63,713 bases of DNA, filler included, from Reticulomyxa filosa (GCA_000512085.1; 21 parts of 21 records of this genome joined end to end with filler, not necessarily neighbours in it), one strand, 5' to 3'. Numbered from the whole stretch's first letter, positions 8,181 through 15,332 are shown. The notes: a model not told the origin generated them from the letters alone. A program made the numbers and translations.

Positions 8181-9391
8181 TGCATATATGTACACAATGT
8201 GTAAATATTTTGTAATACCTAAGCTCTCGCAAGTTGTCGGTCAAAGGCAGATTGGCAATGCGCACGTTGACATGCGATTGAATGTTTTCGTAGTTTGGAA
8301 ACTCGTACTTGGCCACTTGAATGGCCACGTCGTCGAACAGCTCCAACATGTCTTTGGGGAAATCCGCCAGCCACACCGCCAACGTGGGCTGCGCTTTGGC
8401 CAGGTCGGGGTATGACACTTCCAAACTGCATTTGTTCTCTTTTTTTTTTTTTAAAAAAAAAAAATTGTTTTGCTGACAAAGCAGAAACATGAAAACACCT
8501 ACACAAAATGCGCAAAAAAACGAACCGAGACACATTTTTGTAATTCGTTCGGGGTACTTGGGTGCGTGAGCTCCTTGCTCTTGGAACGTGGTTAAAAACT
8601 TGCGAAAGCGACTTTTCACCTCTTTCCGCACCGCCTCTTGGTCCAGGTATTCACGCACAGGGCCTTGATAATCGTCCAAATTCACAATTCCTTCGTCCTA
8701 TAACACACATGGAGAAAAAAGAAATATATATATACATATACATATGTATATATATATATATATATATATATTTATAAATACCTCGGCCTGTCCGGTTTGA
8801 GCAATTGCCAAGGCACGTCGCTGTTGCAGCGAAAACGGCAAATCTTCATCTGCAAACAAAATATATGTATATATTTTGTTTTTTTGTATATGTTAATATT
8901 ATTTGTCAATGCAATTGTTATATTGCTTTCCTCCCTCCTCAAACACAAATAATCTCGGCAACGCATTATCAAAAAAAAATCTGACTGTGCAAAAACAAAC
9001 AAACAACAAATAAAAAAAAAAAAAAAATTTAAAAAATACCGTCTTCCAAGGCGGTGGGCATTCGTCCGGAACGGCCATGTCCTTCTCTTCGATCGCGCTC
9101 GTTGATAAATGCTTCCGCGGCATGCTTTTGTCTTGCGTCCATTGGGGCGTAGTCCTCATTGTCCAAGTTCTCTTCTTCAAACTTATCCAAACGAGGAATC
9201 TCATGGTAATCTCTTTTTTAATACATTAACAAATTAATTTATAAAATAAATAAAAAAAACATTTTTTTTTTTTGCGTACTCTGCAAGGCCTTCCATCAAA
9301 TCCTCTCCCTCCTCTTCCTCAGGGTCAATCTGACTGCTTCTCTCATCGTCTGACTGTTTAACATGTCCATCAAGCACACAATCATTCCTTT
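6221..9391 (-). CDS. MCM2: DNA replication licensing factor MCM2, multi-exon, 3' end truncated. Exons approx. 9391-9280, 9212-9040, 8849-8782, 8697-8526, 8438-8219, 8122-7915, 7788-6733, 6694-6221
   Basis: N-terminal EGEDL..DY..IP.LD; zinc finger CIKC...CPDC; [15 protein letters not shown]; Walker [10 protein letters not shown]; MCM box [30 protein letters not shown]; SRFD arginine finger. GT-AG introns restore the frame. Confidence 0.97.
7789..7914. repeat. Intronic (TA)n/TATAC microsatellite; similar tracts at 8123-8218, 8698-8781 and 25985-26035
   Basis: Directly visible TA-rich degenerate dinucleotide arrays filling the introns. Confidence 0.85.
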
Positions 9392-11359
9392 GCTTCAAAC
9401 AAAAAGAAAAAAACGCGTTTCTATTGAGATTCGCAGAGAAAGAGAGTCACCATTTTTTGTGGGAATGAGTGCTATTGAACAAATATATCAAGTGCTTTGC
9501 AACGAAGAACGTATCGAGACAAACGCTGAAATGGAATTGAAGATCTCTCAATGAATTTTTATATCTCTGCGATCTTTTGTTGGACCCCTATTTTGCAGTA
9601 CCAAGACCCAATTGCGGCAGATTAGTGACTGTTTACAACAAAGGGAAAGTTTGCAATTGAAAAAAAAAAAGTAGAAAGCTTGTTTTGGGAAGACCATTAA
9701 TTCCTTGCAAGTAATAAATTCATTGTTAACTCAAACAACNNNNNNNNNNNNNNNNNNNNNNNNNNNNNNNNNNNNNNNNNNNNTTAATTAATTAANNNNN
9801 NNNNNNNNNNNNNNNNNNNNNNNNNNNNNNNNNNNNNNNTGGAAATGCATTTGGCAAGGTGGTTGCGCTGGTTTGTCATTGAATGGCAGTACTTGGAAAG
9901 ATGCAAAAGGTATAACTCTTTTGCAGATATCAGTTGTTGAGAAATATGGTGGAGCTTTTTAATTTTTTTTTTTCTATGTGAAAAATGATTATTTTGGAAT
10001 TTTTTTTTATTTGAGTAAGTATTAATTTTTTTGGATTTAAAATGACCACATTAATACCAGTTGAAAATTTTTCATTATACTTAAGACTAGTAATCGATCA
10101 GACTATTTAGCATGATTTAAGTATATGTTTGCAATTCGCTGTGCCAATTCTACAACATATTTTTTGCATATTCATTTATGTTGGCAACACTTCTGATGCA
10201 GCTGCAGCGTTTTTGAAATATAATGCCAAAATAACTGCTACAGTTGACAATTCTTTGATCTTTTGCAAACGTTGTTTGAATTTTATATTACTATCAGTAT
10301 TATTCGCAAAATTTACTAGGATCTGATTGATTTGCTTTTCGAACATGGTATACAAAGTCTTTTTGTCCAGATTTTGATGTCAAGTTTACTTTTTTTTTCC
10401 GTTCTGCAAGGTTTTTGCGCTTTGCTTGTTTTACTTTCTGTTAATGGCAAACAAGTCAATTACCGATAAAAACAAGCAAACAAACACAATGATGTTGTGA
10501 GAACGTGTACATTTATGATTCACTGTATTTTTTTTAGTGTTTATATGCTTATTATTTTTGTTTAGAACCTGTTTTTTGTGTTGTTTTGTAACATAATTAT
10601 TCAAAATTAATGTTTTGAATTTTTGACTTTATAGACTTTCTATCAATGACTCTAAAAAAAACATTCATCTTTTTCAGTATAAATATTCCCCACAACTAAT
10701 GAAATGAAAGAATTTATGAAATTAAATATCGCAATATTAATATCTTTAAAGTTTACAATAAAAGGAAATGAATTGAACATTGTTCGTCTAATTGATTGAC
10801 AAAAAAATTTAAAGTGAATTTTTTAAAAAATTAATAAAAGAATTTTGTATAAATAACTTTTTATTTATAAGATATATTTAAAAAAAATTATTTTTTTATT
10901 AAGAAATTTGTAATATTAATTTTGATTTAATTTTAGATTAATTTTTAAATATACAACTATGTGTCAAATATGATATAAAGTTGTATAAGTAAGTGTAGTT
11001 ACACCAGCAATGCTGTTGCTGATTAGTAGTTTTCTACGATTATCCTTAAGAAGCGTCACAATTTTACATTTTTTCTTTTTTTTTCCGTTTGTGATTGTTA
11101 AAAAACGAAATGAATACAAACAAAAAAATCAAGTGATTTTTAGCATTACACGCAAAACTGTCTCTTTTAAGACAGTGTTTTTCATCAGAGTTTGATTGAT
11201 ACAATATCGGAAGCGTTTAAGTAATGAATGGGAAAACATTAAAAAATATTTGAAATGCAAAATCTCTAAACAATAAATTGTGTTCATATACATTTGCGTT
11301 AGTGTAACACTAAAGTTATTTCAATTGGTTAGTTTCCAGAGAACCAAAGACGGTGATAG

Positions 11360-12484: not shown

Positions 12485-12642
12485 NNNNNNNNNNNNNNNN
12501 NNNNNNNNNNNNNNNNNNNNNNNNNNNNTTAATTAATTAANNNNNNNNNNNNNNNNNNNNNNNNNNNNNNNNNNNNNNNNNNNNCTTTATTCATTTTGCA
12601 TTGCACATCACAAGGTAACTCAAAAAAAAAAACAAAAAACAG

Positions 12643-14515
12643 GCCGATGTTTTTTGCCGCAGCATGCACAATTAACATTAAGATCAAACGAGGTAGAATA
12701 CAAAAAAATATTGGAGATAACTACAATTCCAATCAAAGACCGCCTTCGTCGAATTGATGGATTGGTGGAGGTGCTACGAAGAACGGGTGAAAGGATCACT
12801 CAAGAAAAAAAGAAAAAGATAGAGCCCGCAAAGATTCAAGAGAGCGAAGAAAAAAAGGAAAGCTCGAGTTCGGGAACACTTCCTTTTAAGATCGATCTCA
12901 GACCGGTCATGGTGAATGCAATAAAATTACAGTTTCCACAAATCAAGTATATGCTCAAGGGAGAAGAAAAACCAACAACAACATGTGTGACAGATATCGA
13001 CTGGGGTGCAAGTGGAGGTAGATATATTGGAGGCACAATACCTCTACGAAACTGGGCGATTGTTGTAAATGCCAAAGATAGAGATGCAGACTACCAGATT
13101 GAAAACATAGAGCATGAATGGATATCCTTTATTTCATTCCGTGACTTACCAAAAGACACAGTGGCGAGTCCCGACATTTTACGTATCGAATATGACAATG
13201 TCGAAGGCTATCGTGCCATCCTTCAAAGATCGTATCAACTGGCCATGTTGGTGTTACCAGAAGAAGAGATAGGTTCGCAGTACAAATCTCATTTCACTCG
13301 TATTCTGCAATCGGACAAAGCAAAAAACAAGGCGTGCTTAATTCAGTGTATACTACGAGGAAATGTATGCCATCCAAAGACTAAAAGATGCGACAGAAAT
13401 GTTATGAAATGTACCTTTGATGCAGTTATGGCGAAAATTGGCAATGTTCTATTCCAAATTGATCCAAACCTCCCTAGCGGAACAAAAGTAGTAAATATGC
13501 GTAAAACGTGGTGTGTGGGTGTGGAGTTATCGCATCGTTCGGAAAAACCGAGTGCGATTATATTGGCTCTAAGTACGTCCCCTTTAGAGGGAGGTTTGCG
13601 ATCGTGGCATTTTACCACGCATTTGAATCCTTCAAGAAAGGATGTCATAACGTTGGAAGCTGCTGCCACTCTGATGTTTGACGCAATACAAATGGCCGTT
13701 GAAAATGTCGGCACAAGGAATCTGCCAGAGAACATTATCGTCTTGCGAGGAGGGTTGCCTGATAATCGATTGAATGAACTTTATTCAAAAGAATTAGTTG
13801 GTGTGGCAAGAGGGATACACCGATTCAAAAAAAATTTTGGAAATACTGATGAAAATGTTCAAGGATGGAAGTGCAAACTAACTTATATAGTTAGGTGTAA
13901 ACAAGTATTGGACCGATTCGGACAACTAAAAGATGGATCGGAAATTGTCCATCCAATTAAATCACCTGCTACCATTTTTGATAGAATTACATCTGAAAGG
14001 TATTTATGCTACAATGCAATAAACAACAAACAAAAAAATTGGATACACAATATACCAACAATATTATGTCAAGGTTTTGGGATTTTTACATATGGCCGTT
14101 TCATCCAAGAAAAGACGACGCCAAAACCAGACCCTCTCGTTATGTGGTGCTCAAAGATGAAATAGGTTTTGCCAAGAAATGTGCTTTGGATTTATTTCAA
14201 TTACTATACTCGTTATCTTACACGTTTGTCTTCTCGGTCCCGTTTCCATGTTAAGAAGTTTTTTTTTACAACGCTTTGTCTGATACTCTTTGAAAGAAAT
14301 ATTTTGTGTGGAGTACAGTGGGCCCAACTGCATATCCCGGACCGCTGAAATATGCAAAACATTATGCAGAAAGATTTTCACAAATGATCTTCAGGGCAGA
14401 CAAGTCAATTGTGATGCTAAAGCGAAGCAAAAAATTAATTAATCAGCCACAAGTATCAACACCTGTTCAAGACTCCAATCAAAGGATTGAGTCACACAAT
14501 ACAATTGGTTACTAG
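12643..14515 (+). CDS. Divergent Argonaute/PIWI-family protein, 5'-truncated (end of PAZ, L2, MID, PIWI). Exons 12643-13999, 14074-14249, 14319-14515
   Basis: Argonaute motifs in the expected order: FLPQHAQL (PAZ end), NWAIVV, LVLP...Y, IQCI, MAKIG (NAKLGG-like), VGVELSH...PS (GxDVxH), LPENIIVLRGG (P..IIxYRDG), KLTYIVRCKQVLDRF (FIVVxKRxxxRF), DFYI...TRPSRYVVLKDE, LLYSLSY, YPGPLKYAKHYAER (PAPxYYAHxxAxR). Two GT-AG introns (74 and 69 nt) join three ORFs in frame. Confidence 0.88.
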
Positions 14516-15332
14516 TTTACTGAGAAGAGAGAAAAAAAAAGAGAATCCAGTTGATAAATTGGTTTCACAATAGTTATTTTGCATTTGTACTATACTATAT
14601 TTTTTGGTAATTATTTGCTGTCAATGTTTTCATTACTTGAAATTGAAAAATAAAATTTTTCGAGTTATTTGTTTTTCCAACGCAATTCGACAATTGGGAA
14701 AAAAAATGGAAATGCGAGGATAAAAACAATTAGAAAAATTAACAGTTGTCAATGAAGCAAGCACAAAGCTTATCCAGGTAATCAATATGTATCATTTCTT
14801 GTTGCAGATGAAAAAGTACTAATAAAGCAATCTTCTCAACGAAGTGCGTTTACATGAAGCACAAAATTACAAATTGCGTTTGCAATTACTTAATTTATTT
14901 AAAATATAAGACTTGGTCTTACAAAACATTTTTAAAAAGTTGTTCGCAGAACTGTTACTTAACAGGATACGAAAATGTTGCTCTTTTGAGCAATTTTTCT
15001 ATACAAACAAAAATACAGTACAATGCAAAGTAAAGTTGACACCTAAAACGGCACCTTATAGAATGATTGATTTTCTACGTGAAAAACAACATTCAGACAT
15101 AATTTTGTTTTTTTATTATATCTTTNNNNNNNNNNNNNNNNNNNNNNNNNNNNNNNNNNNNNNNNNNNNTTAATTAATTAANNNNNNNNNNNNNNNNNNN
15201 NNNNNNNNNNNNNNNNNNNNNNNNNCTCAAACACAACAAACCTCCAGCAAAAAAGCTGCCAGTCAGCATTAACTGACTGGCATTGGGCGCCCCGCGCCGG
15301 GTTTTGTTTTGCCGGCGGCCAACCCTGCGCCG

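What the first reader, a model, noticed from the sequence alone, without database searches (positions are those of the whole stretch)
12643..14515. Highly divergent, probably slicer-dead Argonaute/PIWI protein
Seen: MID and PIWI motifs in the correct order across three exons, but catalytic positions are altered: first Asp to Glu (VGVELSH), RDG to RGG, and the last His/Asp to Lys (YAKHYA vs YAHLAA). The MID 5'-phosphate pocket keeps Y, Q (IQCI) and one K (MAKIG) but appears to lack the YxxxK lysine and the LKIN lysine. The frame is intact and has introns, so it is a host gene and does not look decayed. Established: loss of DEDH/D abolishes slicing, and divergent non-slicing clades exist (nematode WAGOs, trypanosome PIWI-tryp). 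Inference: a lineage-specific Argonaute clade that may bind unusual guide 5' ends, pointing to an undescribed small-RNA pathway.
Basis: partly seen in the sequence, partly recalled or inferred. Interest (0 to 1): 0.8.

Follow-up and report, generated by a model that had tools for sequence, protein, structure and literature searches.

The report
Probably non-slicing Argonaute of a foraminifer
This is the rear two-thirds of a real, well-conserved Argonaute (small-RNA-guided silencing) gene of the foraminifer Reticulomyxa filosa, from a very divergent Argonaute family, and its RNA-cutting site has been remodelled so that it probably binds targets without cutting them.

Summary
The piece is a whole 2,541-bp contig of Reticulomyxa filosa (RFI_09742, partial). 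It starts inside an intron. Three exons (12643-13999, 14074-14249, 14319-14515) encode the L2-MID-PIWI part of an Argonaute.

The Pfam Piwi match is weak exon by exon (21.3 and 12.7 bits, collinear). The 70%-identical paralog passes the threshold, and its AlphaFold model matches human Ago2 and silkworm Siwi (Foldseek E 2e-25).

Two corrections apply:
- Lys at the fourth position is the norm for the whole family (mostly D-E-D-K) and is an accepted DEDX variant, so it says nothing about activity.
- The MID pocket keeps an invariant Lys-Gln-Lys, and only the Tyr is not conserved.

The E-D-G-K state marks one clade of six sequences (support 100/99) nested among D-E-D-K relatives. Only four columns separate this clade from those relatives. 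Two are catalytic positions and two lie beside the site.

dN/dS against the paralog is 0.10. A polyadenylated environmental cDNA confirms both splice junctions.

Verdict: a new divergent variant of Argonaute, probably slicer-dead. The claim about unusual guide 5' ends is untested.

The parts
12585..12642 (+). 3' end of an intron. The contig starts inside it, and the upstream N and PAZ exons lie off the contig.
   Evidence: It aligns to the 3' end of the paralog's intron and ends in ...cag|GC. In the paralog locus L001 the N/PAZ exons lie upstream.
12643..13999 (+). Exon A: end of PAZ/L2 linker, MID domain and the first two-thirds of PIWI. It carries catalytic positions 1 to 3.
   Evidence: Open frame. 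Pfam Piwi 21.3 bits on profile positions 13-202. 72% identical to P0002.
13284..13286 (+). MID Lys, invariant in the family. It is the likely 5'-phosphate ligand, equivalent to hAgo2 K533 under one alignment. The adjacent Tyr (13281-13283) is not conserved.
   Evidence: Column table. HMMER places it differently, so the assignment is ambiguous.
13344..13346 (+). MID Gln (IQC), equivalent to hAgo2 Q545.
13365..13391 (+). Nine-residue insertion (VCHPKTKRC) in MID, found only in this copy.
   Evidence: Alignment A1; coordinates.
13434..13436 (+). MID Lys (MAKIG), equivalent to hAgo2 K570. It is at least 90% conserved in the family.
13524..13526 (+). Catalytic position 1: Glu in place of Asp (hAgo2 D597).
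   Evidence: Profile alignment to hAgo2/3. Fixed in the clade; Asp in 17 of 17 D-E-D-K relatives.
13641..13643 (+). Catalytic position 2 (glutamate finger): Asp in place of Glu (hAgo2 E637).
13749..13751 (+). Catalytic position 3: Gly in place of Asp (hAgo2 D669).
14000..14073 (+). Intron, 74 nt, GT..AG.
   Evidence: The junction is confirmed by cDNA L002. The same position is an intron in the paralog, where the read-through segment has pLDDT below 50.
14074..14249 (+). Exon B: PIWI core (FWDFY...RPSRYVVLKDE...SVPFP).
   Evidence: Pfam Piwi 12.7 bits on profile positions 244-275; 72% identical to the paralog.
14250..14318 (+). Intron, 69 nt, GT..AG.
14319..14515 (+). Exon C: last PIWI helix carrying catalytic position 4, the C-terminal tail, and the TAG stop at 14513-14515.
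   Evidence: GC falls from about 0.40 to 0.27-0.30 after the stop.
14357..14359 (+). Catalytic position 4: Lys (hAgo2 H807). This is the family norm.
   Evidence: Gapless profile alignment PAPAYYAH / PGPLKYAK. Lys in most family rows, Asp in P0038 and P0042.
14516..15125 (+). 3' UTR or intergenic AT-rich DNA, with AATAAA at 14649 and 14821.
   Evidence: No Rfam family matched.

Best explanation
The piece carries the last three exons (576 codons, L2-MID-PIWI) of a functional Argonaute gene of Reticulomyxa filosa. The contig edge cuts off its N and PAZ exons.

It belongs to a small, very divergent eukaryotic Argonaute family with PAZ + MID + PIWI. The usual active site in this family is D-E-D-K.

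At the base of one clade the active site was remodelled to E-D-G-K. That clade holds this gene, two R. filosa paralogs and three environmental transcripts. The new state has been kept by purifying selection since.

The most likely working (inferred): the protein still loads a small guide through the conserved MID Lys-Gln-Lys pocket and a PAZ domain. It finds complementary RNA, but it silences by binding or by recruiting partners, not by cleaving. The Gly at the third position removes a metal-binding carboxylate.
For: Identity and structure:
- 100% match to RFI_09742, whose contig length of 2,541 bp equals the piece.
- The family profile matches hAgo2/3 at E about 1e-32 and PIWI-clade proteins at about 1e-29 to 1e-30.
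- The AF2 model of the paralog has pLDDT 85 and pTM 0.85. Its Foldseek match to hAgo2 is E 2e-25, TM about 0.65.
- PAZ is present in paralog P0003 and in the full-length relatives. N/PAZ exons lie upstream in the paralog locus.

Active site:
- The residue mapping comes from the profile alignment.
- The column table gives 17 complete D-E/D-D-K rows, 2 DEDD rows, and E-D-G-K only in the six-row clade.
- The clade has support 100/99 and is nested in a 99/98 group of D-E-D-K rows.
- Only 4 columns are fixed-different between the clade and its D-E-D-K relatives. Two are catalytic positions 1 and 3. The others lie 6 residues after position 3 and 3 residues before position 4.

Constraint and expression:
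- dN/dS is 0.10 against the paralog, with dS about 1.6.
- dN on the window branch is 0.074.
- Splice sites are intact and intron positions are shared with the paralog.
- A clade member is a spliced, polyadenylated mRNA.
Against: - No biochemical data exist. Glu at position 1 and Asp at position 2 are conservative changes and could still bind metal.
- No expression or small-RNA data for this gene could be reached.
- This copy has evolved 3 to 4 times faster than its paralog (33 against 8 lineage-specific changes, p = 1e-4). That could mean relaxed constraint.
- The MID Tyr that stacks on the guide's 5' base is not conserved in the family, so guide loading may differ or be absent.
- The PAZ and N domains of this particular gene are not on the contig.
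- The residue mapping rests on sequence-profile alignment. I could not superpose coordinates.
Confidence: 0.6

Rival explanations
1. The protein is still a nuclease. The remodelled site (Glu, Asp, Lys and perhaps the neighbouring conserved His of YAKHYA) supports cleavage with different geometry or one metal ion.
For: - D to E at position 1 and E to D at position 2 swap side-chain lengths and keep two carboxylates.
- All four clade-defining changes cluster at the active site and are then strictly conserved. This fits a re-tuned site as well as a dead one.
- Lys is an accepted fourth residue (PMC6299218).
Against: - Gly at the D669 position removes a metal ligand that established knowledge of RNase H-like Argonaute sites treats as essential.
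- The alignment shows no new acidic residue that is fixed in the clade.
Confidence: 0.17
2. The protein no longer works as a guide-loaded Argonaute. It has been co-opted as a scaffold or regulator that does not bind small RNA.
For: - The canonical MID Tyr is not conserved, and the K566 equivalent is absent.
- This copy alone has a 9-residue insertion in MID.
- This copy has evolved faster than its paralog.
Against: - Lys, Gln and Lys of the pocket are invariant across the family.
- PAZ is kept in the paralogs.
- As I recall (not checked here), the PIWI clade also lacks the K566 lysine.
Confidence: 0.1
3. It is a decaying duplicate (young pseudogene) on a small, poorly assembled contig.
For: - The contig holds only part of the gene.
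- This copy is the faster-evolving one.
- No sequencing run could be listed.
- The NCBI model is garbled.
Against: - 576 codons are open across three exons with canonical GT..AG introns at conserved positions.
- dN/dS is 0.10 overall, and about 0.09 on this branch if dS is split evenly.
- The garbled model is an annotation error, not a defect in the sequence.
Confidence: 0.05

Closest known systems
Human Ago2/Ago3 and other AGO-clade eukaryotic Argonautes (PDB 4ola, 5vm9)
   Same: - Same L2-MID-PIWI fold (Foldseek E 2e-25, TM about 0.65).
- Profile match at E about 1e-32, with collinear catalytic and MID motifs.
- PAZ is present in the paralogs.
   Different: - Only 13-17% identical.
- No match to the ArgoN, ArgoL1, ArgoL2 or ArgoMid Pfam models in full-length relatives.
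- The tetrad is E-D-G-K instead of D-E-D-H.
- The MID Tyr is not conserved.
PIWI-clade Argonautes (Siwi 5guh, Piwi 7yfq, Miwi/Mili)
   Same: - Similar profile scores (about 86 to 108 bits, against 113 to 116 for human Ago2/3) and similar fold scores to the AGO clade.
- No Lys at the hAgo2 K566 position. That the PIWI clade has Gln there is from my own knowledge of the Siwi pocket, not tested here.
   Different: - No Piwi_N match.
- The motif reads YAKHYA instead of YAHKLA, so Lys takes the place of the catalytic His.
- The first and third Asp are lost.
Naturally non-slicing Argonautes (human Ago1/Ago4, nematode WAGOs, trypanosomatid PIWI-tryp)
   Same: A degenerate catalytic tetrad in an otherwise intact, conserved Argonaute. 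The expected working is the same: guide-directed binding and recruitment of effectors.
   Different: This is an independent loss inside a different, much more divergent family. No phylogeny with these groups could be made here, because no canonical sequences could be obtained.
Long-A prokaryotic Argonautes with a DEDK tetrad
   Same: Lys as the fourth tetrad residue, which is counted as canonical (PMC6299218).
   Different: Those are prokaryotic defence proteins. Here Lys occurs in a spliced eukaryotic gene family with PAZ, and in this clade it comes together with loss of the third Asp.
Plasmodiophora brassicae PbAGO1/PbAGO2, the only functionally studied rhizarian Argonautes
   Same: They come from the same eukaryotic supergroup, Rhizaria.
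   Different: PbAGO1/2 are reported as canonical AGO-clade proteins with DDH residues (PMC13547706). The foraminiferal family is far more divergent, and this clade lacks two of those residues.

Membership tests
Eukaryotic Argonaute/PIWI superfamily | Piwi domain (PF02171) recognised by HMM | tested here: met
   - Window exons alone: 21.3 and 12.7 bits, collinear, each below the 28.9 cut-off. The exons were not joined.
- Paralog P0002 scores 44.6 bits and clade member P0004 63.8 bits, both above the cut-off.
- The family profile matches hAgo2/3 at E about 1e-32.
Eukaryotic Argonaute/PIWI superfamily | MID-PIWI lobe fold (Rossmann-like MID plus RNase H-like PIWI) | tested here: met
   - The AF2 model of the 70%-identical paralog has pLDDT 85 and pTM 0.85.
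- All listed Foldseek matches are Argonautes: E 2e-25, probability 1.00, TM 0.57-0.67.
- The window protein itself was not folded, because its exons were not joined.
Eukaryotic Argonaute/PIWI superfamily | PAZ domain upstream | tested here: inconclusive
   PAZ is not on this contig. It is present in paralog P0003 (34.5 bits) and in full-length relatives. N/PAZ exons lie upstream in the paralog locus L001 at 8477-10068.
Slicer-competent Argonautes | Complete DEDX tetrad (X = H, D or K) | tested here: not met
   The window has Glu, Asp, Gly, Lys at the four positions. The third Asp is Gly in all six clade members.
Argonautes that bind 5'-phosphate guides | MID pocket Y-K-Q-K | tested here: inconclusive
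   - Lys, Gln and Lys are invariant in the family.
- Tyr is present in the R. filosa copies but is not conserved.
- HMMER's alignment puts Thr and Gln at Y529 and K533. A helix-end anchored alignment puts the invariant Lys at K533.
- I could not superpose coordinates to decide between them.
AGO clade | ArgoN, ArgoL1, ArgoL2, ArgoMid domain models; phylogenetic placement | tested here: inconclusive
   None of these Pfam models hit the full-length relatives at E <= 0.01. No tree with canonical AGO or PIWI sequences could be built.
PIWI clade | Piwi_N model; YAHKLA-type motif; phylogenetic placement | tested here: inconclusive
   There was no Piwi_N hit. The PDB profile scores for the PIWI clade are close to those for the AGO clade. 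No tree could be built.

The most novel reading that the evidence does not exclude
The roughly 70 cluster representatives form a deep eukaryotic Argonaute lineage of their own, outside AGO, PIWI and WAGO. It would be centred on Foraminifera or their relatives. It would have Lys as its normal fourth catalytic residue and a guide 5'-end pocket that works without the stacking Tyr. Within it, the E-D-G-K clade would be a dedicated non-slicing effector of a foraminiferal small-RNA pathway that nobody has described.
Probability: 0.2. Interest if true: 0.65.

Novelty: new variant of a known kind. Interest (0 to 1): 0.4.

Why it matters
RNA silencing in Rhizaria is almost unstudied. A 2026 paper on Plasmodiophora calls it 'largely unexplored' (PMC13547706). 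In the library searched, foraminiferal Argonautes appear only as a 'PIWI' gene family up-regulated during nuclear breakdown (Zerfall) in Allogromia (bioRxiv 10.64898/2026.10.21.760831).

The finding gives a concrete entry point. It is a family so divergent that one exhaustive sequence search found only 68 relatives among 1.84 billion representatives. The family normally has a D-E-D-K site, and one clade has a remodelled, then frozen, site.

Non-slicing Argonautes are common, so the principle is not new. The value lies in filling in Argonaute diversity in a major, neglected eukaryotic group, and in correcting the gene models.

Tried and rejected
All searches were exon by exon. The paralog P0002 and the cDNA-derived P0004 served as contiguous stand-ins. 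So there is no whole-protein Pfam score or fold for the window gene itself.
- phmmer of exon A against PDB sequences gave only a spurious RecA repeat match. The family profile was needed.
- I first took 12615-12642 for a 28-nt intron, or the upstream stretch for coding. I rejected this after aligning it to the paralog's intron.
- The look-up of sequencing runs listed no run, so read laying was not used and expression of this gene is untested.
- The first listing of cluster members timed out. The second showed that the relatives are unnamed JGI sequences.
- Two further word-index protein searches returned only family members and no canonical AGO or PIWI. A tree placing the family relative to AGO, PIWI and WAGO could therefore not be built.
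- Sample look-ups gave accession numbers but no organism names. GCA_024449935 is not in the paper library.
- A 'DEDK' literature search hit only unrelated motifs.
- dS against the environmental outgroup is saturated, so no branch-specific dN/dS could be computed directly.
- Rfam found nothing in the piece.

Full report
WHAT THE PIECE IS

Positions 12585-15125 are identical to a whole 2,541-bp contig of the freshwater foraminifer Reticulomyxa filosa. Its annotated product is 'hypothetical protein RFI_09742, partial' (P0001).

Two paralogs exist in the same genome:
- RFI_27655 (P0002), 70% identical, on a 15.7-kb contig fetched as L001.
- RFI_10474 (P0003), 50% identical, carrying a PAZ domain.

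GENE STRUCTURE

The long open frame and the sequence give three exons:
- Exon A: 12643-13999.
- Exon B: 14074-14249.
- Exon C: 14319-14515, with the TAG stop at 14513-14515.

The two introns are GT..AG, 74 and 69 nt long.

The first 58 bases (12585-12642) align to the 3' end of the paralog's intron, which ends ...atag|GCAGATG.

Both internal junctions are confirmed by an environmental contig (L002, encoding P0004, about 70% identical). It lacks both introns and ends in a poly(A) tail, so it is a spliced mRNA of a close relative.

GC content drops from about 0.40 to 0.27-0.30 right after the TAG.

The NCBI model P0001 is mis-spliced. It reads through intron 1, skips FWDFYIWPFHPRK, and splices past the stop.

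Every search with window sequence was exon by exon, and P0002 and P0004 served as contiguous proxies.

IS IT AN ARGONAUTE?

Taken alone, the window exons match Pfam Piwi only weakly but in the right order:
- Exon A: 21.3 bits, profile positions 13-202.
- Exon B: 12.7 bits, profile positions 244-275.
- The cut-off is 28.9 bits.

The contiguous relatives pass that cut-off:
- P0002: 44.6 bits.
- P0004: 63.8 bits.
- Full-length relatives: up to 90 bits, each with a PAZ domain.

In L001 the exons for the N and PAZ parts lie just upstream (8477-10068) of the annotated Piwi gene. NCBI has therefore split one full-length Argonaute gene in two.

A profile of 38 family rows (alignment A1) matches human Ago3/Ago2 at E about 1e-32. 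It matches PIWI-clade proteins at about 1e-29 to 1e-30.

An AlphaFold2 model of P0002:53-634 is confident: pLDDT 85.2, pTM 0.85. Its only internal disordered stretch, 445-463, is the intron read-through of the NCBI model.

Foldseek finds only Argonautes:
- hAgo2: E 2e-25, TM about 0.65.
- Siwi: E 9e-23.
- Identity to these is 13-17%.

The language-model atlas also returns only PAZ/Piwi clusters.

HOW DIVERGENT IS IT?

An exhaustive phmmer search of exon A against 1.84 billion representatives found only 68 proteins at E <= 1e-3. None of those examined is a canonical AGO or PIWI. Where sources could be looked up, they are unnamed JGI, MERC or Logan environmental or transcriptome contigs.

None of the AGO-specific models (ArgoN, L1, L2, Mid) nor Piwi_N hits the full-length relatives.

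THE CATALYTIC SITE

The HMMER alignment of the family profile to hAgo2/3 maps the window residues as follows:

| hAgo2 motif | hAgo2 residue | Window motif | Window residue |
|---|---|---|---|
| GaDVTH | D597 | GVELSH | Glu |
| RqEII | E637 | RKDVI | Asp |
| YRDG | D669 | LRGG | Gly |
| PAPAYYAH (gapless) | H807 | PGPLKYAK | Lys |

The glutamate finger is changed too.

The family context changes what these substitutions mean:
- 17 complete rows, plus the truncated P0025, have D, E or D, D and then Lys: a D-E-D-K site with the hallmark YAKHYAE.
- Two rows have Asp at the fourth position (DEDD).
- Several distant branches are degenerate in other ways.
- Lys is listed as an accepted X of the DEDX tetrad (PMC6299218).

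The Lys is therefore ancestral to the family and says nothing about activity.

What is special is E-D-G-K. It occurs only in the window gene, P0002, P0003, P0004, P0005 and P0011.

In a maximum-likelihood tree these six form one group with support 100/99. They are nested in a 99/98 group whose other members are D-E-D-K.

I scanned all columns for positions that are:
- fixed in this clade,
- absent from the D-E-D-K rows, and
- at least 80% uniform in those rows.

Only four columns qualify:
- Catalytic position 1 (D to E).
- Catalytic position 3 (D to G).
- A Gln-to-Arg change six residues after position 3.
- An Ile-to-Leu change three residues before position 4.

The clade is thus defined by a concerted remodelling of the active site that has been frozen since.

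IS THE GENE ALIVE?

Counts were made exon by exon against L001 and then summed:
- pN 0.145, pS 0.66.
- dN 0.161, dS 1.59.
- dN/dS 0.10.

Intron positions are shared with the paralog.

This copy is the faster-evolving one:
- With P0004 as outgroup it has 33 lineage-specific amino-acid changes against 8 in P0002 (p = 1e-4).
- With P0003 as outgroup the counts are 40 against 14.
- It also has a private 9-residue insertion in MID (13365-13391).

The window's branch dN in the PIWI region is 0.074, against 0.041 for P0002. If dS is split evenly, that gives about 0.09, which is still strong constraint. The even split is an assumption, because dS to the outgroup is saturated.

Expression of this gene itself could not be tested, because no sequencing run was listed.

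THE MID POCKET

In the family the Tyr is not conserved: it is V, I, M, L, T or Q elsewhere. Three residues are invariant or nearly so:
- The Lys right after the Tyr.
- The Gln of IQC.
- The Lys of MAKIG.

HMMER's gapless stretch back from the Gln puts Thr and Gln at Y529 and K533. The family has seven extra residues here. The model shows them as an extra short helix after the main one. Anchoring on the helix end instead puts the invariant Lys at K533 and a conserved Gly at Y529.

I could not inspect coordinates, so this stays open.

The safe statement is this. A Lys-Gln-Lys core is kept. The stacking Tyr is not a family feature, and the K566 equivalent is absent. From my own knowledge, the PIWI clade also lacks that lysine. 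'Unusual guide 5' ends' is therefore possible for the whole family but unsupported as a special trait of this gene.

MOST LIKELY WORKING

- Shown: an intact, constrained MID-PIWI protein with the third catalytic Asp replaced by Gly.
- Inferred: it still loads a small guide and acts without slicing, like human Ago1/4, WAGOs or PIWI-tryp.

Rivals considered:
- A re-tuned but active nuclease.
- A scaffold that no longer binds a guide.
- A decaying duplicate.

COMPARISON WITH THE LITERATURE

In the searched library:
- No paper describes Reticulomyxa or foraminiferal Argonautes beyond a passing 'PIWI' gene family in Allogromia.
- Rhizarian RNAi has been studied only in Plasmodiophora, whose AGOs are canonical with DDH.

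VERDICT

The finding is a new, very divergent variant of a well-known protein kind. Its loss of slicing is plausible but unproven. Catalytically dead Argonautes are common, so interest is moderate (0.4).

Noticed in passing
window 12585-15125 (NCBI model P0001): The deposited gene model RFI_09742 is mis-spliced. It reads through intron 14000-14073, skips the conserved FWDFYIWPFHPRK, and splices past the true TAG stop into AT-rich 3' DNA.
   Followed up: yes
L001:7548-11964: The paralog RFI_27655 is annotated as two genes. tblastn shows N and PAZ exons at 8477-10068 directly upstream of the Piwi gene, so it is one full-length Argonaute. Its model also starts in an intron and reads through another (P0002 residues 497-515, pLDDT below 50).
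   Followed up: partly
window 13365-13391: A nine-residue insertion (VCHPKTKRC, two Cys and one His) in the MID domain is present only in this copy. This copy also evolves 3 to 4 times faster than its paralog.
   Followed up: partly
L002:1-110: The environmental cDNA of the close relative has a one-base frame shift just after the GSRYKSQ codons, upstream of the called start. It could be an assembly error or a real change.
   Followed up: no
P0010 and P0074 (family relatives): Some D-E-D-K family members carry an N-terminal WW domain. The P0010 match is weak (22.6 bits, below the cut-off). P0074's WW comes from the precomputed Pfam list. This fusion is unusual for an Argonaute.
   Followed up: no
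P0035, P0039, P0049, P0050, P0063 (family relatives): A separate long-branch group of the family has lost the tetrad in a different way (K/T/E at position 1, A/S/C/H at position 3). It also has a large insertion in MID. This is a second, independent loss.
   Followed up: partly
P0032 (NCBI assembly GCA_024449935.1, contig of 3,342 bp): This is a family fragment with an intact FRDG from a second NCBI genome assembly. I could not find out which organism it is. It may show which other sequenced organism has the family.
   Followed up: partly
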